Part shown: piece after piece, positions 1,141 through 60,793 of the stretch | How positions within the stretch are numbered: the first letter of the stretch is position 1 | How the letters are laid out: each line of letters starts with the position of its first letter | Assembly: GCF_964188315.1 (NCBI RefSeq) | Contig: NC_135656.1 | Span: 107,136,001-107,200,000, forward strand | Source of the DNA: Podarcis muralis | Lineage: Eukaryota | DNA length: 64,000 bases | Direction: 5' to 3' | Translations under genes and position numbers: made by a program | The notes under the pieces: generated by a model | The model's input: only the letters and a program-made list of their open reading frames with translations | Told to the model about the DNA's origin: nothing | Database searches by the model: none

Positions 1141-3825
1141 ATGGCCTCACAACCAGTTCAGATGGCTTTTGAGCGTCTGAATGACTCAAATTACTTGCTG
1201 TGGTCGGAACGCATGCAGGCAGTGCTGCAGAGGGATCGTCTCTGGCAAGTGGTGAGTAAGTTTCCTGCGAAGCCTGATGATGAAGACCTCGACAAAGACC
1301 AAAGAGCAAGGGCCACAATTGTCTTGGGGCTGGAAGATTCCCAGTTGCCGTATGTGAGGGGAATCAAGACAGCTAGAGGTGTGTGGCAAGCACTTAAAGA
1401 ACTCCATGTGCGTGAGACAGCGGTTTCCAAGCTGTTCATTCGCAAGGCATTGTACAAGGCAATGTTACAGCCTGGGGTTACAATGCAGGAACACCTACAC
1501 AGTTTACAGTTAAAGTTTACTGCGCTACAGGAAAGAGACTGTGCGTTAGACCAGCAGGAGAAGGTGGCTATTATTTTGAGTTCTCTCCCGGAAAGCTGGG
1601 ATAATTTAGTTTTGTCTCTAGAAGGCATGCAGGAGCATGATTTATCAGTCAGTTACGTTACTGGGCGTTTGATTGAAGAATGGCAGAAGAGGCAAGAAAG
1701 GTCGTTGGCTGCAGAGGCTTCTACAGGCGGGCGGTTTGGAAGGAGTTCTCATGCCGTGCCAGAGGTGGAGCGAAAGCAGCGTGCCGGTGAGGAGTCAGCG
1801 TTTGCTGTTAGGCGTTGTTTCCGATGTGGGTCTTCAGCGCATCTAAAACGACAATGTCCGGAGTTGGTCAAGTCTCAGTTGCCGGTGCAGGAGCAGAGAC
1901 GAGATCAGCAGCAGCAGCAGCAGCGTAAAAAGAAATTCTTCAAACGAAAACAGTCGGCTCAGCTGGTGACCGGCGAGGTCAAGATTGCTGATGAGAAACA
2001 AGCGGTCTGGGTGGTCGATTCGGGAGCATCTCGCCACATCGTAAATTCAGATGAATTGTTTGTTTCCAAGAACTCAGCACAGCGCAGCCAGGTGGCTTTA
2101 GCAGACGGAAGTACTTCCGAAGTGATTTCGGGGGGTGCAGTTTTTGTTCCTTGTCATCGTGAATGCCTGCAAAATGTACTTTGTGTGCCGTCATTAAGGA
2201 GCAATCTGATGTCTGTAGATTGTTTGCTAAAAGCTGGGTTTAAAGTGTATTTTGAAGGAGACAGTTGCATTATTAAGAAGGCTGGTGAGATTTTAGGCAC
2301 TGCTAAGTCAGAGGGAGGCTTGTTTTGGCTTAAAGCAGGATCTCAAGTTGCAGCAGTAGTCAGTAAATCTCAGCCTGCAGTGAATAACAAAGCTATACAT
2401 GACAACTGTGTGCACTTATTGCATAGGAAAATGGGGCATGCTTGCTGGAAAAGTGTACTAAAAATGTCTGAATTGGCTGATGGGGGTAATTTAAAGAGTT
2501 GTAACAAGTACCTTGATTGTAATGTGTGTAAAAAGGTTAAAACCCACAGAGTCTCTTACCCCAGAAGTGACAGAGTTAGTGAGGCACCGCTACAGCTGGT
2601 TCACATGGACGTAATTGGCCCATTTGCTGTAAGCAGGGGTGGATCGCGCTTTTCATTAACAATTGTGGATGACGCCACACGTTATTCCTGGGTTTTTCCC
2701 ATGAAGAATAAGGGTGACGTGTTCACTAAGTTTAAAGGCTGGGTGGCATCTGTGGAAAGATTTCTGTCCATTAAACTTAAAAGGATTCAGACGGACAGAG
2801 GTGGCGAATTTATGTCAAATGCTTTTAAAGATTGGTTACAAAAGCGTGGCATTGGGCATAGAAAAACGAACGTTTTTTCCCCAGAGGAGAATGGCGTTGC
2901 AGAGCGAAAAAACAGATCTTTACAAGACATGATGTTTGCCATGCTTGAGGATGCTGATTTGCCCATGTCTTATTGGGGGGAGAGCATGCTCACCGCGTGT
3001 TATCTCCAAAACAGGCTCTTTCATCAAACAATAGGTACAACCCCGTACTTTAAATTGTTTCAGAAAAAACCCAAAATTGACCATTTGCATGTGTTTGGAT
3101 CAAAAGCCTGGGTATTAATTCCAAAACAAATGAGGAAGAAGGGAGATCCTAAGACCAAACAGTTAGTGTTTGTGGGTTACCAGGAGCTGGGAAAAGGTTT
3201 CCGCTTTGCTGAAGGGACAAATGGCATTGTGATCTCCAGGAATGCCAGTTTTTGTGAACACAGTGGCTGGGAGAGACTACATGCCAATACTGAGGTTTGG
3301 TTTGAACCTTCCCAGGAGCTTCATGACTCTGAAGATAAACATAGAGAATCAGAGTCTGAGGGGGAGGAAACTTCAGATAAGAGCTCTCAAGAAAGTGGTG
3401 TTAGCCAAAGACCAGTTGCTATGCAACAAAAGAGAGGTCGCAGTTCTGAAGAGGAAAGTGGGTCAGAAGAAAAATTTTCTCCCAGAAGATCTAAAAGACA
3501 AAACAAAGGAGTGCCTCCGGTGCGTTTTTCCCCAGATACTGCAAATGTGTTTAGTGTAATTGCAGAACCCAAGAGTTTTCAGGAGGTGTTAAAGTTACCA
3601 AAAGAGGAGGCAGAGCGCTGGAAACAGGCAATGGAGGAAGAGATGTCCTCTCTGAATGAGCACAAGGTTTTTACACCAGTAGCAGCGCCTGAGGGGGCAA
3701 AGATTGTAGGCTGCAGGTGGGTGTACAAACTTAAACCTCTGGTGACAGGAGAGTACAAATACAAAGCTCGTTTAGTGGCTCAAGGATACTCTCGGAGGCC
3801 TGGAAAAGATTATGACGAGACCTAG
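1141..3825 (+). CDS. Copia Gag-Pol polyprotein, truncated in RT (894 aa)
   Basis: Copia Gag N-terminus; zinc knuckle CFRCGSSAHLKRQC; protease WVVDSGASRH; integrase HHCC (H..H..CNVC) and DDE core (HMDVIGP, DRGGEF, NGVAERKNR); RT start WVYKLK..KARLVAQGY, then a premature stop. Confidence 0.93.
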   Translation: MASQPVQMAFERLNDSNYLLWSERMQAVLQRDRLWQVVSKFPAKPDDEDLDKDQRARATIVLGLEDSQLPYVRGIKTARGVWQALKELHVRETAVSKLFIRKALYKAMLQPGVTMQEHLHSLQLKFTALQERDCALDQQEKVAIILSSLPESWDNLVLSLEGMQEHDLSVSYVTGRLIEEWQKRQERSLAAEASTGGRFGRSSHAVPEVERKQRAGEESAFAVRRCFRCGSSAHLKRQCPELVKSQLPVQEQRRDQQQQQQRKKKFFKRKQSAQLVTGEVKIADEKQAVWVVDSGASRHIVNSDELFVSKNSAQRSQVALADGSTSEVISGGAVFVPCHRECLQNVLCVPSLRSNLMSVDCLLKAGFKVYFEGDSCIIKKAGEILGTAKSEGGLFWLKAGSQVAAVVSKSQPAVNNKAIHDNCVHLLHRKMGHACWKSVLKMSELADGGNLKSCNKYLDCNVCKKVKTHRVSYPRSDRVSEAPLQLVHMDVIGPFAVSRGGSRFSLTIVDDATRYSWVFPMKNKGDVFTKFKGWVASVERFLSIKLKRIQTDRGGEFMSNAFKDWLQKRGIGHRKTNVFSPEENGVAERKNRSLQDMMFAMLEDADLPMSYWGESMLTACYLQNRLFHQTIGTTPYFKLFQKKPKIDHLHVFGSKAWVLIPKQMRKKGDPKTKQLVFVGYQELGKGFRFAEGTNGIVISRNASFCEHSGWERLHANTEVWFEPSQELHDSEDKHRESESEGEETSDKSSQESGVSQRPVAMQQKRGRSSEEESGSEEKFSPRRSKRQNKGVPPVRFSPDTANVFSVIAEPKSFQEVLKLPKEEAERWKQAMEEEMSSLNEHKVFTPVAAPEGAKIVGCRWVYKLKPLVTGEYKYKARLVAQGYSRRPGKDYDET

Positions 3826-4685
3826 GCCCGGTTAGGACATATCTAGGGTTGGAAGTGTGCTGGGCCCAAGATGGCAGCTGCCTAATTAGTCAGCAGAACA
3901 AAGTTAAACAACTACTGACTACATACAGGATGCAGGATTGCAAAGGGGCAGTGGTGCCTATGGATCCAGGTTTCATAAAAACACTTCATATAGATGAGAG
4001 TCCTGAATTTGAACATCCTGATGTATATCATTCTGTAATTGGAAGTTTATTGTATCTAGCACAGTGGTCCAGACCTGATATTAGCTACGCAGTAGGCATA
4101 TTAAGTAGATTGGTCTCAAAACCCACACTAAATGCCTGGAAAGGGGTAAAACAAGTTCTGAGGTATCTCAAACAGACAATTGGCTATATGTTACAATTAA
4201 ATTCTTCAGAGGATGAAATGTTGAGTTGCTACTGTGATAGTGACTGGGGAAATTTGCCGGATAGAAAATCTGTCACAGGACTAGTCATAATGGTTGGTGG
4301 AGCTTTAATCAGCTGGCGGTCACGCAAGCAAGACGTTGTAAGTGTGTCATCAACGGAATCAGAGTACGCCGCATTGAGTGAATTGTGCAACGAGGTGATT
4401 TATTTCAAGCATTTGTTAGCAGATTTAAATGTAAATTGTGGAGAACCAGTACAAGTTTACATTGATAATCAAGCTTGTATAACCTTAAGTAAAACAGAGG
4501 GTTTCAAATCGCGTTCCAAACATATCTCTGTAAAATACCAAAATGTACGTTGCTGTGTACAAGACAATGTAATCACCTGTACTTATGTATCAAGTGAAGA
4601 AAATGTAGCAGATGTATTAACTAAACCATTGGCAAAGATAAAGAACAAGCGAATGTGCAAGGGTTTAGGTTTGCTGGAAAAATAA
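3819..4685 (+). pseudogene. Out-of-frame RT C-terminus plus RNase H of the same copia element
   Basis: Frame reads DLGPVRTYLGLEV..., RPDISYAVG, YCDSDWG, SSTESEY, ADVLTKPL; joined out of frame to the upstream ORF by a deletion. Confidence 0.9.
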
Positions 4686-5969: not shown

Positions 5970-6519
5970 CTTGAAGAAACAGTAGAGTGAGATAAGCCAG
6001 AAAAAGTCTTCTTTCTTCAATTTCTTACACAGACCCCACTATGCTTAAAGGTAGGGGTGAAATGTTCCTGCAGCCTTAGCCACCACTAAAACAAATGGCA
6101 GCATGGTCTTCTGGTGCCAGGATAATCCCCTTCAAGTCTTTTTTAAGGCTTGTGTGGAATCTTCCATTTCACAAAGGGGAAGTTCAGTCTTCACAATTGA
6201 TCATAAACTCCGCTACAGAAAACCCATGGAGCAAAGCACTCTCATTGTCCTCAGTGTCTAGCTGTTCTTCTCAGTTGTCCTTAAGCCTGGTTCCACATCT
6301 CTTAGTACTGTAGATTTTTTTTAGACAAAAAAGACACAAGTTCTTGCTGGATTTAAACAATGCCAGTAGGATTCCCTGGCCGGAGGCACAACACTGCGTC
6401 GCCGATTGTTCTCGCCTCAGTCACCATGCCCCTGTGTAGCATATAAAACTGGATTAAACACCTTCTGCCTTTCAAGCAACTCATTCCTACATAAGCCTTG
6501 ATCACTACCACTAATAATA

Positions 6520-6605
6520 ATTATTTATTTGTACCCTGTCCATCTGACTGGGTTGCCCCAGCCACTCTGGGTGGCTTCCAACACTTATAAAAACATAATA
6601 AACAC
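6520..6605 (-). mobile_element. L2-like LINE 3' end fragment
   Basis: Reverse complement of the GGAAGCCGCCCAGAGTGGCTGGGG tail also seen at 17240-17345 and 40590-40680. Confidence 0.7.
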
Positions 6606-6784
6606 AGACTGAGACCGGAACTTTCCCGTGAATAACTCTGTTGCTTTCACGCAAACCCGGGAGGGCAGTCATCTAATCATTTCTCTAAAATGTAACCTCT
6701 TGCCCGACGCTGAAGGACAGATGGGACCGCTTGTCACACACCTTCCCTCGCATAGATTGCAGGGGTCACATAATTAATTGGTGT

Positions 6785-6850
6785 TTTGATTTGTTGGAAG
6801 CTGCCCAGAGTGGCTGGGGGAGCCCAGTCAGACGGGTGGCTTATAAATAA
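6785..6850 (+). mobile_element. L2-like LINE 3' end fragment
   Basis: GGAAGCTGCCCAGAGTGGCTGGGG...TATAAATAA, same family tail. Confidence 0.7.
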
Positions 6851-7034
6851 ACTCTTATTAATAATATATTATTATAAACAGTGCCAAAATAAGTTTCTTT
6901 ATTAGGTACATATCTAGCCCACCCTTCATCACAACAGATCCCAGGTCAAAATAAACACACACACACACACACACGTATATCTCGTGTGTGTGTGTGTGTG
7001 TGTATGTGTATATATATATATACACACACACACA

Positions 7035-7247
7035 CTCGGGTTAAGTACTTCGTTCCGGAGGTCTGTTCTTAACCTGAAACTGTTCTTAACCTGAAGCACC
7101 ACTTTAGCTAATGGGGCCTCCTGCTGCCACTGCACCACCAGAGCATGATTTCTGTTCTCATCCTGAAGCAAAGTTCTTAACCCGAGGTACTATTTCTGGG
7201 TTAGCGGAGTCTGTAACCTGAAAGGTATGTAACCCGAAGTACCACCG
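7035..7247. mobile_element. Tc1/mariner-pogo-type MITE with eroded ends, flanked by (CA)n/(TA)n microsatellites
   Basis: Internal sequence matches the copies at 14702, 19934, 32464 and 60581. Confidence 0.8.
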
Positions 7248-7334
7248 TGAGTGTGTGTATGTATATGTATATATATATATGCAGGTTTTGGTGTCCTCGG
7301 GTGTCTTCCCGTGTAAAAGTTGGGGTGTCTAGGC

Positions 7335-7368
7335 GACGTTTCGACGAGGTCTCACTCGTCATCTTCAG
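7335..7368 (-). ncRNA. Mirror copy of the putative minimal hammerhead motif
   Basis: Exact reverse complement of 7763-7796. Confidence 0.55.
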
Positions 7369-7762
7369 GCTGGTGCTTTCGGCTTCTTGTTACTGGAACA
7401 GAGCAGGATCTCAGTGTTTGAGTTCCTATAAATACTGTTGAGGGGTGTGGTGTATAGCCTCCAATGTTCTGGGCCGAGAGGAAGTTCCCAGGCTAGTGTG
7501 CCTTTTCTTCTTTTGTTCCTTAGTTGCTTGAGGGATATCTTGAGTGATTTCTTGAGTGATATGCAAACATATCACTCAAGAAATCACTCAAGATATCCCT
7601 CAAGCAACTAAGGAACAAAAGAAGAAAAGGCACACTAGCCTGGGAACTTCCTCTCGGCCCAGAACATTGGAGGCTATACACCACACCCCTCAACAGTATT
7701 TATAGGAACTCAAACACTGAGATCCTGCTCTGTTCCAGTAACAAGAAGCCGAAAGCACCAGC

Positions 7763-7796
7763 CTGAAGATGACGAGTGAGACCTCGTCGAAACGTC
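7763..7796 (+). ncRNA. Putative minimal type I hammerhead ribozyme motif
   Basis: CTGAAGA-T-GACGAG(tgagac)CTCGTC-GAAA-CG-TC: conserved core, perfect 6-bp stem II, palindromic ACGT stem III; stem I has only 2 bp. Confidence 0.55.
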
Positions 7797-7878
7797 GCCT
7801 AGACACCCCAACTTTTACACGGGAAGACACCCGAGGACACCAAAACCTGCATACCTATACCCGTGAAAATCTACGAAA

Positions 7879-7927
<49 letters not shown>

Positions 7928-8029
7928 AACAAACAAACACCAGTGCAGCTTTTAAGAGTTGGGGCAGCTACTACCTGTGAGCGAAAACGATACTGGGCTA
8001 CCCAGTACCAGGCAGCCTCTTGTGCTCAC

Positions 8030-8069
8030 CTATATATTGTAAGGACATTGCTGCTTATCTGCGCTCTTA
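8030..8069 (-). other. Candidate 40-nt noncoding exon 2 of the minus-strand gene
   Basis: Acceptor CCCTTCCCCTGGTCAG and donor TAG|GTGAGC on the minus strand. Confidence 0.4.
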
Positions 8070-8129
8070 CTGACCAGGGGAAGGGAGGTCCTATAGGGAA
8101 GAGGTCTCCCCTTTAAAAAGTCAAGTGAC

Positions 8130-8960
8130 AGGGCCTTTCGCGGCTCCTTCTCTGCGCCCCCCCCTCCCGGCCGACTGCGAGCAGCCCCTTCGCTTCCCTC
8201 AGGCTCGCTCCCTAAGCCCAGGCGCTACTATATACTCGGATAAATAGGGCGCGGGGCGGAGAAGGGCTGCCCTGCTCCCTCCCTCGTGTCCTTCGGTTCC
8301 CCCTCCCCTCCGTCCCTTCCCCCTCCATACCCCTCTCGGTCCCTCTCTCCCCCGCCCGCCTCACTCGGGGGGGGGCCCGCGCTGCCCCCCAACTCCTCCG
8401 GCGAGAGGGGCGCCCCCCGCCTCCCCGCGCACTGACCGAGGGCAACGGCAGCAATCGGCAGCCAGCAGCAGAATTCCAGCCACTTCCGCCAGGCAGCGCC
8501 GGAAGCGAACCCATGGCAACCAGCCGTCCCGCCCCCCCTCACCCCACCCGCTTTCGGATTGAGGCCACGCCTCCCTTCCCTCATGCGAGGGCGGAGACTG
8601 GAGGGCGGTTTCTTCAGGCGAGCCCTTCCTCGCCGGAGGCCACGCCCTCCTCCCTCCCTCCGCTCTCCTAACCAACTCACGACTCGCAAGGCCGTTCGAT
8701 CCGGCGCCGGCCACGCCCCGCTCGCCCTTGACCCGTCGCGTCAAAAGCGTCACCGCTTCCGTAAGGAGGACGGGGGAAGCGCGGCGGGTGACGTCGCTCT
8801 CGCCTCAGAAATATGTATATGCATGCGCGCACGCGCTTGCAGAGACGTAAAACGACGTAGGTAAGACTCGTCGCCCCTCCCCTTTTGCTTTCCTCCAATC
8901 CGCCGCCCAGCAGCCCGCACCAGACACGCCCACATTTGGGAACCCCCCCCTTCCAACTTC
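8130..8960. promoter_or_regulatory. CpG-island promoter, probably bidirectional
   Basis: Very CpG-dense; GC boxes, ETS sites (CACTTCCG 8481, CCGGAAG about 8499), CCATGGCAAC (8511-8520), TGACGTCG (about 8789), NRF1-like GCATGCGC (8821); divergent donors CCGA|GTGAGG (minus, 8365/8364) and TAG|GTAAGA (plus, 8860/8861). Confidence 0.85.
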
Positions 8961-9480
8961 CTACTTGGTTTCAAGGCTGGTTTTTCCCTCCAGTCTCGTC
9001 TCCGTCCGTGTGTCTCTTGCGCCCCCTGGCGGTTCAGAATAATCATTTGAAAACCAGAGCTTCCTTCAATTGTCCCTAGAAGAACTCTGTGTTTGTATAT
9101 CCAGTTGTGGCCGCATGGTGTATATTCCCATGCATACTAAACATTTACTGGCACGCATCACAAGCCTCCAAATTGTACCGATGGCACTGGCTCCCACTGT
9201 CCCTGGCATCTGTGTCCCTTTTCTCTCCTCCCTGCCTATCCATAAGGAACTCTGGAACTCGAGAGACACCATGTCTCACAGAGGACCACAATTTCTCTCA
9301 AACTGCAGACGCTCCAAGTATCCCTATTTTTCAGGTTCAGGTAGGTAGCCGTGTTGGTCTGACGCGGTCGAAATAAATAACAAAATTAATTTTTTATTTA
9401 TTTTCCAGGCAGGGACAGTCCTGGATTTATAGAAGCCATCCCAAGTTTCTGATTTGATCCCAGAATGTCCCACTTTTCCT

Positions 9481-11239: not shown

Positions 11240-11368
11240 NNNNNNNNNNNNNNNNNNNNNNNNNNNNNNNNNNNNNNNNNNNNNNNNNNNNNNNNNNNNN
11301 NNNNNNNNNNNNNNNNNNNNNNNNNNNNNNNNNNNNNNNNNNNNNNNNNNNNNNNNNNNNNNNNNNNN
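11240..11368. other. Assembly gap (N run)
   Basis: Run of N characters. Confidence 1.
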
Positions 11369-14701: not shown

Positions 14702-14943
14702 CAGTGGTACCTCGGCTTAAGTACCTAATACGTTCCGGAGGTCCGTTCTTAACCTGAAACTGTTCTTAACCAGAAGCACCACTTTAGCTAATGGGGCCTC
14801 CTGCTGCCGCTGAGCCGCCGCCACACGATTTCTGTTCTCATGCTGAAGCAAAGTTCTTAACCCGAGGTACTATTTCTGGGTTAGCGGAGTCTGTAACCTG
14901 AAGGGTCTGTAACCTGAAGCGTATGGAACCCGAGGTACCACTG
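14702..14943. mobile_element. Tc1/mariner-pogo-type MITE
   Basis: TIRs CAGTGGTACCTCGG / CCGAGGTACCACTG; TA TSD. Confidence 0.92.
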
Positions 14944-19933: not shown

Positions 19934-20129
19934 CAGTGGGACAGGTTACAGACTCTGCTAACCCAGAAATAGTACCTCGGGTTAAGAACTTTGCTTCAGG
20001 ATGAGAACAGAAATCGTGTGGCGGCAGTGGGAGGCCCCATTAGCTAAAGTGGTACCTCAGGTTAAGAACAGTTTCAGGTTAAAAACAGACCTCCAGAACG
20101 AATTAAGTTCTTAACCCGAGGTACCACTG
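19934..20129. mobile_element. Tc1/mariner-pogo-type MITE, left-deleted
   Basis: Right TIR CCGAGGTACCACTG plus TA; body as at 14702. Confidence 0.85.
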
Positions 20130-32463: not shown

Positions 32464-32721
32464 CAGTGGTACCTCAGGTTACATACGCTTCAGGTTACAT
32501 ACGCTTCAGGTTACATACGCTTCAGGTTACCGACTCCGCTAACCCAGAAATAGTGCTTCAGGTTAAGAACTTTGCTTCAGGATGAGAACAGAAATCGTGC
32601 TCCGGTGGCGTGGCAGCAGCGGGAGGCCCCATTAGCGAAAGTGGTGCTTCAGGTTAAGAACAGTTTCAGGTTAAGAACGAACCTCTGGAACGAATTAAAT
32701 ACTTAACCCGAGGTACCACTG
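32464..32721. mobile_element. Tc1/mariner-pogo-type MITE
   Basis: TIRs CAGTGGTACCTC / GAGGTACCACTG; TA TSD. Confidence 0.92.
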
Positions 32722-47701: not shown

Positions 47702-49203
47702 GTAGTGAAGTCAAATGGGCCTTAGAAAGCACTGCTAATAACAAGGCCAGTGGAAGTGATGATATTCCAGCTGAACTATTTAAAATTTTAAAAGATGATG
47801 CTGTTAAGGTGCTACACTCAATATGCCAGCAAATTTGGAAAACTCAGCAGTGGCCAGAGGATTGGAGAAGATCAGTCTACATCCCAATCCCAAAGAAGGG
47901 CAGTGCCAAAGAATGCTCCAACTACCGCACAATTGCACTCATTTCACACGCTAGCAAGGTTATGCTTAAAATTCTACAAGGCAGGCTTAAGCAGTATGTG
48001 GACCAAGAACTCCCAGAAGTGCAAGCTGGATTTCGAAGGGGCAGAGGAACCAGAGACCAAATTGCAAACATGCGCTGGATTATGGAGAAAGCTAGAGAGT
48101 TCCAGAAAGACATCTACTTCTGCTTCATTGACTATGCAAAAGCCTTTGACTGTGTCGACCACAGCAAATTATGGCAAGTTCTTAAAGAAATGGGAGTGCC
48201 TGATCACCTCATCTGTCTCCTGAGAAATCTCTATGTGGGACAAGAAGCTACAGTTAGAACTGGATATGAAAAAAATGATTGGTTCAAAATTGGGAAAGGA
48301 GTACGGCAAGGCTGTATATTGTCTCCCTGCTTATTTAACTTATATGCAGAATTCATCATGCGAAAGGCTGGGCTGGATGAATCCCAAGCCAGAATTAAGA
48401 TTGCTGGAAGAAATATCAACAACCTCAGATATGCAGATGACACAACCTTGATGGCAGAAAGTGAGGAGGAATTAAAGAACCTTTTAATGAGGGTGAAAGA
48501 GGAGAGCGCAAAATATGGTCTGAAGCTCAACATAAAAAACCCCGAAGATCATGGCCACTGGTCCCATCACCTCCTGGCAAATAGAAGGGGAAGAAATGGA
48601 GGCAGTGAGAGATTTTACTTTCTTGGGCTCCATGATCACTGCAGATGGTGACAGCAGCCACGAAATTAAAAGACGCCTGCTCCTTGGGAGAAAGGCGATG
48701 GCAAACCTAGACAACATCTTAAAAAGCAGAGACATCACCTTGCCAACAAAAGTCTGTATAGTTAAAGCCATGGTTTTCCCAGTAGTGATGTATGGAAGTG
48801 AGAGCTGGACCACAAAGAAGGCTGATCGCCGAAGAATTGATGCTTTTGAATTATGGTGCTAGAGGAGACTCTTGAGAGTCTCATGGACTGCAAGAAGATC
48901 AAACCTCTCCATTCTGAAGGAAATCAGCCCTGAGTGCTCACTGGAAGGACAGATCCTGAAGCTGAGGCTCCAATACTTTGGCCACCTCATGAGAAGAGAA
49001 GACTCCCTGGAAAAGACCCTGATGTTGGGAAAGATGGAGGGCACAAGGAGAAGGGGACGACAGAGGACGAGATGGTTGGATAGTGTTCTCGAAGCTACCA
49101 GCATGAGTTTGACCAAACTGCAGCAGGCAGTGGAAGACAGAAGTGCCTGGCGTGCTCTGGTCCATGGGGTCACGAAGAGGCGGACACGACTAAACAACAA
49201 CAA
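47702..49203 (+). mobile_element. BovB (RTE) LINE, 5'-truncated 1.5 kb
   Basis: RT motifs NYRTIALISH, GFRRGRGTRDQI, GVRQGCILSP, RYADD; frameshift near 48540; CAA-repeat tail. Confidence 0.93.
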
Positions 49204-60580: not shown

Positions 60581-60793
60581 CAGTGGTACCTCGGGTTAAG
60601 AACTTAATTCGTTCTGGAGGTCCGTTCTTAACCGGAAACTTTTCTTAACCTGAAGCACCACTTTAGCTTATGGGGCCTCCCGCTGCTGCCGCACTGCCAT
60701 GGCTCGATTTCTGTTCTCATCCTGAAGCAAAGTTCTTATTTCTGGGTTAGTGGAGTCTGTAACCTGAAGCATCTGTAACCCGAGGTACCACTG
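60581..60793. mobile_element. Tc1/mariner-pogo-type MITE
   Basis: TIRs CAGTGGTACCTCGGGTT / AACCCGAGGTACCACTG; TA TSD. Confidence 0.92.

What the first reader, a model, noticed from the sequence alone, without database searches (positions are those of the whole stretch)
7278..7853. Perfect 286-bp-arm palindrome next to a housekeeping-type promoter: candidate hairpin-RNA locus
Seen: 7278-7563 and 7568-7853 are exact reverse complements with a 4-nt spacer, about 280 bp from the CpG island and downstream of two predicted minus-strand donors. Established: Penelope-like elements often leave inverted terminal copies; long near-spacerless palindromes extrude cruciforms and are unstable; long intronic dsRNA is an ADAR, Dicer and MDA5 substrate. 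Inference: a very recent fold-back insertion that would put a 286-bp dsRNA stem in the pre-mRNA, a potential endo-siRNA source against the family or a modulator of host splicing.
Basis: partly seen in the sequence, partly recalled or inferred. Interest (0 to 1): 0.8.

Follow-up and report, generated by a model that had tools for sequence, protein, structure and literature searches.

The report
Fold-back Penelope retrotransposon insertion in (TA)n
The perfect 576-bp palindrome is real in the assembly, but it is best read as a very young, 5'-truncated Penelope-like retrotransposon fragment that was copied back on itself as it inserted into a (TA)n microsatellite, a known habit of these elements, and nothing here shows that it makes a hairpin RNA.

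Summary
Window 7278-7563 is the exact reverse complement of 7568-7853 (286/286), with spacer CAAA, and there is no other copy in the window.

- **Identity:** Each arm carries a minimal hammerhead ribozyme core of the type described for Penelope-like elements (PLEs), reading outwards from the centre. The two copies therefore lie head-to-head.
- **Family:** Public-run contigs show the arms belong to a high-copy family. Other copies of that family continue past the centre with different sequence, so both arms are 5'-truncated at the same nucleotide.
- **Site:** The centre (GCAAAC) does not match the family sequence at that point. Only the right arm has a 27-nt terminal "tail". The insert sits in a (GT)n(AT)n(AC)n microsatellite.
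- **Precedent:** Published PLE anatomy includes 5' truncation, head-to-head inverted copies with palindromic junctions, a one-sided tail of about 30 bp, and (TA)n targets.

Most likely mechanism (inferred): the cDNA snapped back and primed synthesis on itself during target-primed reverse transcription.

The hairpin-RNA reading is untested. One sampled RNA-seq run gave no reads on the unique flank or CpG island, and no small-RNA data were available.

I could not get independent read support for the central junction, because microsatellites break the short-read contigs.

First readers of this scan noted dozens of similar PLE palindromes elsewhere in this genome; those notes are unchecked.

Verdict: a new member of a known kind, of low to moderate interest.

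The parts
7278..7563 (-). Left arm: a 5'-truncated copy of the 3' region of a Penelope-like element, with the sense strand on the minus strand (3' end at 7278, truncated 5' end at 7562). It lacks the 27-nt tail.
   Evidence: Exact reverse complement of 7568-7853. The hammerhead core lies on the minus strand. A family contig diverges after 7562 (loose end 'behind 7562').
7563..7568 (.). Centre GCAAAC. It is not element sequence: a 4-nt loop CAAA closed by a fortuitous G-C pair, read as untemplated nucleotides at the snap-back point.
   Evidence: 18 contigs of X36 (agreement 0.98) and 2 of X25 match from 7569 rightwards and carry a different sequence before it. X2 shows the reverse complement of that sequence after 7562.
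7568..7853 (+). Right arm: the same 5'-truncated PLE 3' region with the sense strand on the plus strand (truncated 5' end at 7569).
7854..7880 (+). One-sided 27-nt terminal extension ('tail') present only on the right arm, between the arm and (AT)n.
   Evidence: Read from the sequence; it is unique in the window. The right outer bin 7815-7895 is about 10 times deeper than the mirrored left bin in family contigs, which suggests the tail belongs to the family's 3' end. It matches the 30-40 bp one-sided tail described for PLEs (PMC8557442; 31 bp in PMC3846280).
7335..7368 (-). Minimal hammerhead (min-HHR) core in the left arm: CUGAAGA, one extra U, a 6-bp helix II, GAAA, palindromic ACGU, and the GUC cleavage triplet.
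   Evidence: Pattern search: 2 matches against 0.00 expected by chance. The features are those listed in PMC4209133.
7763..7796 (+). The same min-HHR core in the right arm.
7246..7279 (.). Left target remnant, (GT)n(AT)n microsatellite. The junction with the left arm lies in TA microhomology.
7881..7943 (.). Right target remnant, (AT)17(AC)n(AAAC)3 microsatellite.

Best explanation
The palindrome is a single, very young insertion of the 3'-terminal ~312 nt of a high-copy Penelope-like retroelement (PLE) family into a (TA)n tract. The proposed sequence of events is as follows. The element's endonuclease nicked the (TA)n tract. The minus-strand 3'-OH at about 7881 primed reverse transcription of the PLE RNA from its 3' end, copying the tail and then the arm from 7880 to 7569. 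Synthesis stopped after ~312 nt and a few untemplated nucleotides were added. The cDNA 3' end then snapped back on itself and the polymerase copied its own cDNA outwards (7562 to 7278). It stopped 27 nt short of the cDNA's start, and the end was joined to the other side of the break through TA microhomology. Filling in the complementary strand gives a perfect head-to-head palindrome with a 4-nt loop. It is therefore a by-product of PLE retrotransposition and not a dedicated hairpin gene. If transcribed through, it would form a 286-bp dsRNA in which each hammerhead is locked against its antisense. Shown: the palindrome itself, the PLE-type hammerhead and its orientation, 5' truncation of both arms at the same nucleotide, a centre that is not family sequence, the one-sided tail, and the microsatellite target. 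Inferred: the order of events and snap-back self-priming.
For: (1) The arms are exactly complementary over 286 nt with spacer CAAA. (2) A min-HHR core with all four diagnostic traits of PLE hammerheads is present: an extra nucleotide after A9, a G10.1-C11.1 pair, a long helix II, and palindromic 15.2-16.2 with no loop 3. It occurs once per arm and points outwards (criteria from PMC4209133). (3) The arms are a high-copy family, with word depth of 1e4 to 2.5e5 against 8-16 on the unique flank. Family contigs run on past 7562/7569 into a different, shared sequence in three runs, so both arms are truncated at the same nucleotide and the fold-back is not a property of the family. (4) At 7523 every laid family contig has A where the window has G. 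By symmetry both arms carry this private variant, as expected if one arm was copied from the other. (5) The 27-nt extension occurs on one arm only, and both flanks are TA-containing microsatellites. (6) The literature describes exactly this anatomy for endonuclease-positive PLEs: strong 5' truncation, an adjacent inverted 5'-truncated copy, a 30-40 bp tail at one end, and (TA)n bias (PMC8557442). [quoted passage not shown] Snap-back 5' junctions have been observed experimentally for another target-primed retroelement, R2 (PMC11331408). (7) First-reader notes report many PLE palindromes of varied arm length in (TA)n in this genome; these are unchecked leads.
Against: No full-length family member with RT and GIY-YIG could be fetched, so PLE identity rests on the hammerhead and the insertion anatomy. 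Rfam's hammerhead models do not hit, even at E up to 10, and helix I has only 2 contiguous base pairs. No read or contig shown bridges the centre, so the junction lacks independent confirmation. Snap-back is inferred from a single end product; a later replication template switch would leave the same product. PMC3846280 favoured self-priming on an antisense template, which is a different variant of the mechanism.
Confidence: 0.72

Rival explanations
1. Functional hairpin-RNA locus. The palindrome lies in the first intron of a minus-strand housekeeping gene, is transcribed, and yields a 286-bp dsRNA that Dicer or ADAR processes into endo-siRNAs against the PLE family or that alters host splicing. 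This is compatible with the origin given above; the claim at issue is function.
For: The hairpin would be perfect, at -596 kcal/mol. A CpG-rich block lies 150-250 bp away, and GT donor-like sites can be read on the minus strand. There is a precedent in Drosophila melanogaster strains transformed with Penelope: rearranged copies with long inverted repeats coincide exactly with the siRNA-producing regions (PMC3681739). RNA runs show an A>G plus T>C excess over the stretch, but this is mostly on the neighbouring MITE.
Against: There were zero RNA-seq reads on 7896-9000, including the CpG island, in the sampled 12% of run X23, and 'RNA?' contigs do not cover the unique flanks. Arm-mapping reads are mostly 90-99% alike and so come from other copies. 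No small-RNA data exist here. The host gene and its exons were not identified. As one of apparently many such palindromes, it has no sign of selection.
Confidence: 0.1
2. Assembly or sequencing artefact: a fold-back chimeric read or a mis-join at (TA)n created an inverted duplicate of a genuine single-arm PLE insertion.
For: No independent contig shown bridges the centre. Independent runs of the same species hold no more of the palindrome's words (0.55) than a relative whose unique flanks differ at roughly one base in twenty (0.55-0.57), while the probable source sample holds 0.83. PLE inverted structures are known to trouble assemblies (PMC8557442).
Against: The inverted segment is bounded precisely by element ends. 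It has different unique flanks on its two sides, and those flanks are also found in the relative's contigs (records 17-24). It has an untemplated centre, a one-sided tail and a TA-microhomology junction; these are features of PLE integration and not of read chimeras, which invert everything beyond a breakpoint. Short-read contigs drop rare variants next to repeats, so the low word share is expected in any case. Similar structures are reported across the genome only for PLEs (unchecked).
Confidence: 0.08
3. Post-insertion inverted duplication. An ordinary 5'-truncated PLE copy inserted first; later a replication-fork template switch or hairpin-mediated repair at the (TA)n tract duplicated it in inverted orientation.
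For: (TA)n tracts form hairpins and stall forks. The end product would be identical.
Against: No (TA)n or other target sequence sits at the centre, so the switch would have had to occur exactly at the element's truncated 5' end. The 6 central nucleotides are neither family nor flank sequence. PLE-specific recurrence, if the scan notes hold, points to the integration step.
Confidence: 0.08
4. Foldback or MITE-type DNA transposon whose long terminal inverted repeats are the arms, flanked by a TA target-site duplication.
For: TA dinucleotides flank both arm ends, and there are long inverted repeats with a tiny loop.
Against: Family copies do not share the fold-back: contigs of three runs continue past the centre into a common different sequence. 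The arms carry a strand-specific PLE hammerhead. The flanking TA is simply part of the microsatellite.
Confidence: 0.02

Closest known systems
Complex tandem/inverted insertions of endonuclease-positive Penelope-like elements (Penelope/Poseidon, Neptune), as described by Craig et al. 2021 (PMC8557442) and Arkhipova et al. 2013 (PMC3846280)
   Same: It shares 5' truncation, a head-to-head inverted copy, a palindrome at the inverted junction, a one-sided ~30-bp tail, (TA)n target preference with no readable target-site duplication, and a minimal hammerhead in the terminal repeat.
   Different: There is no ORF-bearing unit between the inverted repeats: the whole insert is just two equal 285-nt 3' fragments. 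The host is a squamate-like vertebrate. The tail is 27 nt against the 30-40 nt described. RT/GIY-YIG of the family could not be examined.
Minimal hammerhead ribozymes of metazoan PLEs (Cervera and de la Pena 2014, PMC4209133)
   Same: It has the CUGANGA and GAAA cores, a bulged nucleotide after position 9, a G10.1-C11.1 pair, a 6-bp helix II, a palindromic ACGU in place of helix III (dimer-type), and a GUC cleavage triplet.
   Different: Helix I has only 2 contiguous pairs here. Activity is untested. In a read-through transcript the motif would be sequestered by its antisense arm. Rfam hammerhead models do not detect it.
Snap-back 5' junctions of target-primed reverse transcription (R2 PRINT insertions, PMC11331408) and classical hairpin self-priming of second-strand cDNA (the latter from my own knowledge)
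   Same: Reverse-complemented cDNA is fused at the cDNA 3' end, with a few extra nucleotides at the turn.
   Different: For R2 these are rare events seen in an engineered system. Here the enzyme would be a PLE RT, for which no in vitro system exists, and the self-copy runs almost the whole length of the cDNA.
L1 5' inversions by twin priming (from my own knowledge)
   Same: It is an inverted arrangement created during target-primed reverse transcription.
   Different: Twin priming joins two different, adjacent parts of the RNA. Here the two arms are the same part, truncated at the same nucleotide, which twin priming on one RNA cannot give.
Hairpin-RNA / endo-siRNA loci derived from inverted Penelope copies in Drosophila (PMC3681739)
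   Same: A long inverted repeat of PLE sequence could give dsRNA.
   Different: No transcription or small RNAs have been shown here. The activity of a somatic endo-siRNA pathway in reptiles is not established (my own knowledge).

Membership tests
Penelope-like element insertion (EN+ PLE) | Minimal or canonical hammerhead motif in the terminal repeat, on the sense strand | tested here: met
   one motif per arm against 0.00 expected by chance. The traits were checked against PMC4209133.
Penelope-like element insertion (EN+ PLE) | Family encodes a PLE-type RT fused to a GIY-YIG endonuclease | not testable with these tools
   The arms are non-coding 3' fragments and the host genome cannot be searched. 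No GIY-YIG was found in the window ORFs scanned, and no other copy of the arm is present in the window.
Penelope-like element insertion (EN+ PLE) | 5' truncation, with an adjacent inverted 5'-truncated copy (head-to-head) | tested here: met
   loose ends at 7562 and 7569, together with the outward hammerhead orientation.
Penelope-like element insertion (EN+ PLE) | A 30-40 bp tail at one end only | tested here: inconclusive
   There is a 27-nt one-sided extension at 7854-7880. That it belongs to the family is suggested only by the depth asymmetry.
Penelope-like element insertion (EN+ PLE) | Microsatellite, especially (TA)n, target | tested here: met
   (GT)n(AT)n lies on the left and (AT)17(AC)n on the right.
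Hammerhead ribozyme (Rfam Hammerhead families) | Match to a curated covariance model, and self-cleavage | tested here: not met
   No hammerhead family was listed at E up to 10; this is expected for motifs without helix III. Cleavage cannot be tested here.
Hairpin-RNA / endo-siRNA locus | Transcription through the inverted repeat | tested here: inconclusive
   One search gave no reads on the unique flanks in one sampled RNA-seq run. Arm reads cannot be assigned to this locus, and only one tissue/run was examined.
Hairpin-RNA / endo-siRNA locus | 21-23 nt small RNAs from both arms, and A-to-I editing | not testable with these tools
   No small-RNA run was available.
Foldback / MITE DNA transposon | Family copies share both inverted arms and the same centre | tested here: not met
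   family contigs continue beyond the centre into a common unrelated sequence.
microRNA precursor families (MIR7996, MIR837, mir-9 and others) | Score at or above the Rfam gathering threshold | tested here: not met
   all hits fall below the gathering score, occur on both strands, and reflect only the generic perfect hairpin.

The most novel reading that the evidence does not exclude
PLE reverse transcriptase in this lizard-like genome may routinely snap back on its own cDNA. That would make perfect palindromes of any length a regular product of PLE integration and would explain the long-unexplained inverted pseudo-LTR architecture. This particular copy, if it sits in the first intron of a CpG-island gene, might also be transcribed into a 286-bp dsRNA that feeds small-RNA silencing of a still-active PLE family in a vertebrate.
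Probability: 0.1. Interest if true: 0.55.

Novelty: new member of a known kind. Interest (0 to 1): 0.25.

Why it matters
On its own this locus is an ordinary product of Penelope-like element activity, and it should not be catalogued as a hairpin-RNA gene. It has three modest uses.

- **PLE activity:** A perfect 286-bp palindrome is expected to be unstable, so its intact state marks very recent PLE activity in this genome.
- **Mechanism:** The exact symmetry of the inner ends, the centre that is not family sequence, and the one-sided tail are a clean natural record of a PLE integration intermediate. No in vitro system exists for PLE integration. A genome-wide census of such copies could discriminate snap-back self-priming from other models.
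- **Fragility and dsRNA:** Long spacer-poor palindromes next to promoters are candidate fragile sites and possible dsRNA sources, which makes presence/absence typing in populations worthwhile.

Tried and rejected
- **Rfam scan at permissive E-values.** It returned only sub-threshold miRNA-precursor hits on both strands, which reflect the generic hairpin, and no hammerhead family. I rejected the miRNA reading.
- **Other copies in the window.** I searched for further copies of the arm, the tail or the centre, and for other short-spacer palindromes. There are none.
- **PLE coding sequence in the window.** The RVT_1 ORF at 47809-48651 has no detectable GIY-YIG neighbour and no similarity to the arm. 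The copia element at 1141-4685 is unrelated.
- **Exact-match scan of metagenome contigs with the hammerhead core.** It gave 0 hits.
- **The search of earlier findings by sequence.** The result was blank.
- **Read laying.** It could not show a contig bridging the centre or linking the palindrome to the unique flanks. Contigs break at the microsatellites (6943-7042, 7243-7287, 7872-7944) and Logan contigs drop rare variants, so neither presence nor absence in other animals or in the related species could be established. A 6819-to-8150 joint in X36 has only 21 nt on its shorter side, and X36 contigs cover both flanks, so I disregarded it.
- **Foldback/MITE reading.** Rejected on the loose ends.
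- **Inverted duplication of the host flank.** Beyond the compound microsatellite the two flanks are unrelated (extension string).
- **Hammerhead cleavage as the cause of the shared 5' end.** Rejected, because the cleavage site (after 7796) is 228 nt from the truncation point.

Full report
**1. Observation**

Window 7278-7563 is the exact reverse complement of 7568-7853 (286/286), separated by CAAA. The match runs to 292 nt at 99% because both outer ends abut TA repeats. It is the only long, short-spacer inverted repeat in the 64-kb window, and blastn finds no third copy of the arm there. Either strand would fold as RNA into one uninterrupted hairpin of -596 kcal/mol. A GC- and CpG-rich block lies at about 8000-9000.

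**2. Setting**

The window is vertebrate and squamate-like.
- It holds a cluster of single-exon olfactory-receptor ORFs, a sulfotransferase ORF and a copia-type LTR element.
- Immediately left of the palindrome (7036-7245) is a copy of a very abundant element. Alignment with four other copies in the window shows it to be a Tc1/mariner-type MITE with terminal inverted repeats. Its 5' repeat is missing here.
- The palindrome itself lies inside a compound microsatellite: (GT)n(AT)n on the left and (AT)17(AC)n(AAAC)3 on the right.

**3. What the arms are**

Each arm contains the following, in order (two matches, 0.00 expected by chance):
- CUGAAGA;
- one extra U;
- a 6-bp helix (GACGAG/CUCGUC);
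- GAAA;
- the palindromic tetranucleotide ACGU;
- a GUC triplet.

The traits that Cervera and de la Pena list for the minimal hammerheads of Penelope-like elements (PLEs) are all present. [quoted passage not shown] Helix I is weak, with two contiguous pairs. The paper reports equally short helices I for the Drosophila virilis element.

Rfam's hammerhead models do not report the motif even at E up to 10. I read that as a consequence of the missing helix III. It still means that membership of the curated families was tested and not met.

The motif is on the plus strand in the right arm (7763-7796) and on the minus strand in the left arm (7335-7368). The sense strands therefore diverge from the centre, giving a head-to-head arrangement with the 3' ends outside.

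**4. Family evidence from public runs**

Twenty runs from eight studies hold part of the stretch. I laid four on 6600-9000:
- an independent DNA run of the same species (X2);
- a DNA run of a related species (X36);
- a set of contigs guessed to be RNA (X25);
- one raw RNA-seq run (X23).

The arms carry summed word depths of 1e4 to 2.5e5, against 8-16 on the unique flank in X2, so they belong to a high-copy family.

Family contigs do not turn back at the centre. Eighteen contigs of X36 (agreement 0.98) and two of X25 match from 7569 rightwards and carry a common, different sequence before it. One contig of X2 shows the reverse complement of that sequence after 7562. Three conclusions follow:
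- both arms are 5'-truncated copies, cut at the same nucleotide;
- the fold-back is private to this locus and not a family feature, which rules out a Foldback/MITE transposon;
- the six central bases GCAAAC (7563-7568) are neither family nor flank sequence.

Every laid family contig has A at 7523 where the window has G. By symmetry, both arms carry this private difference.

The right arm is followed by 27 nt (7854-7880) that the left arm lacks. The right outer bin is about ten times deeper than its mirror image, which suggests that these 27 nt are the true family 3' end.

**5. Comparison with what is known**

Craig et al. 2021 (PMC8557442) describe PLE insertions as:
- highly 5'-truncated;
- often having an inverted 5'-truncated copy adjacent, forming inverted repeats;
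- having a 30-40 bp tail at only one end;
- biased towards microsatellites, (TA)n among them, which hides target-site duplications.

Arkhipova et al. 2013 (PMC3846280) describe a 31-bp tail on one of the inverted pseudo-LTRs. [quoted passage not shown]

Every structural feature of this locus fits that description. It differs only in being reduced to the two short 3' fragments, with no ORF-bearing unit between them.

**6. Mechanism (inferred)**

A single continuous minus strand can account for everything.
1. The minus-strand 3'-OH in the right-hand (TA)n primes on the 3' end of a PLE RNA.
2. cDNA is made from 7880 to 7569.
3. A few untemplated nucleotides are added.
4. The end folds back, with one G-C pair closing a 4-nt loop, and the polymerase copies its own cDNA (7562 to 7278).
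5. It stops 27 nt before the cDNA's origin, and the end is joined to the left-hand (TA)n through TA microhomology. The arm ends in GCATA and the flank is (TA)n.

Snap-back junctions of this kind have been seen directly among R2-mediated insertions (PMC11331408). Classical twin priming on one RNA cannot give two copies of the same segment. Two separate RNAs would not be expected to stop at the same nucleotide. The hammerhead cleavage site is 228 nt from the truncation point, so self-cleavage does not define the shared end.

A later replication template switch at the (TA)n tract remains possible. It would, however, have had to occur exactly at the element's truncated end, leaving no target sequence in the centre.

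**7. Age**

There are zero differences in 286 paired positions, including nine CpGs per arm. The copy also shows few shown differences from the family contigs (most difference rows were not displayed). Both point to a very recent event. With a neutral rate of the order of 1e-9 to 2e-9 per site per year (my own knowledge, approximate), the 95% upper bound is a few million years, unless conversion between the arms homogenises them. Long spacer-poor palindromes are generally unstable (established knowledge), which argues the same way.

**8. Artefact question**

I could not show a contig or read that bridges the centre in an independent sample. Contigs break at the flanking microsatellites, and Logan contigs drop rare variants beside repeats. 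Independent runs hold about the same share of the palindrome's words (0.55) as the related species (0.55-0.57), whereas the probable source sample holds 0.83. That is what one expects if only family-shared words survive in contigs, so it is uninformative.

Several features argue against an artefact:
- the inverted segment has precise element boundaries;
- the two flanks are different unique sequences, and both are also present in the relative's contigs;
- the centre is untemplated;
- the tail is one-sided;
- the junction uses TA microhomology.

First readers also report similar PLE-specific palindromes of many arm lengths across this genome. Those notes are unchecked. I put the artefact at about 8%.

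**9. Function**

In Penelope-transformed Drosophila melanogaster, siRNAs map precisely to the inverted regions of rearranged Penelope copies (PMC3681739). Nothing supports it at this locus, though.
- The sampled 12% of RNA-seq run X23 gave no read on 7896-9000, including the CpG island.
- The "RNA?" contigs do not cover the unique flanks.
- Reads on the arms are mostly 90-99% alike and come from the family at large.
- No small-RNA run was available.

The tool warns that depth dips are not findings, so this is absence of evidence only. In a read-through transcript both hammerheads would be sequestered in the duplex.

**10. Verdict**

This is a real (about 90%), very young, head-to-head fold-back insertion of a PLE 3' fragment in a (TA)n tract. 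It is a new member of a known kind. It is not evidently a dedicated hairpin-RNA gene. Its main value is as one clean data point for the PLE integration mechanism and as a marker of ongoing PLE activity.

Noticed in passing
window 7036-7245 (other copies at 14711-14919, 32504-32712, 19942-20120, 60590-60791): This is a very high-copy element, with summed word depth in the millions in DNA runs. It is a Tc1/mariner-type MITE with terminal inverted repeats beginning TACAGTGGTACCTCGG and internal ~17-23 nt repeats, not a SINE. The copy next to the palindrome has lost its 5' terminal repeat to an (AC)n tract.
   Followed up: partly
window 6600-9000, mostly 7005-7247 (read laying): RNA runs show more variant places of type A>G plus T>C than of type G>A plus C>T (X23 49 against 25; X25 28 against 15). 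DNA runs do not (X2 17 against 20; X36 19 against 32). This may be an ADAR-editing signature on MITE-containing transcripts, or a bias in which copies are expressed.
   Followed up: no
window 6951-7035: A compound, itself palindromic microsatellite, (AC)n...(GT)n(AT)n(AC)n, lies just left of the MITE. It draws sub-threshold mir-297/mir-466-type Rfam hits. It has the same (GT)n(AT)n(AC)n grammar as the tract that received the PLE.
   Followed up: no
window 6512-6601 and 6774-6863: A 90-nt inverted repeat, 74% complementary and 172 nt apart, is made of another high-copy repeat (the depth peak at 6762-6842). It is unrelated to the PLE arms.
   Followed up: no
window 7569 leftwards in other family copies (loose ends): The family sequence just upstream of the truncation point contains a ~13-nt stretch that is the reverse complement of the MITE's 3' terminal repeat (CCTGAGTACCACT against CCTGAGGTACCACT). 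This could be chance or a MITE fragment nested in the PLE master copy.
   Followed up: no
window 1141-4685: A copia-type LTR retrotransposon ORF (gag, integrase and the start of RVT_2) is interrupted near 3825-3849.
   Followed up: no
window 11240-11368: A run of 129 N (an assembly gap or masked stretch). I left it untouched.
   Followed up: no
window 8000-9000: The CpG-rich block carries a minus-strand ATG at 8514 followed by a GT donor-like site after about 26 codons. The gene was not identified, and no RNA-seq reads were seen in the one run sampled.
   Followed up: partly
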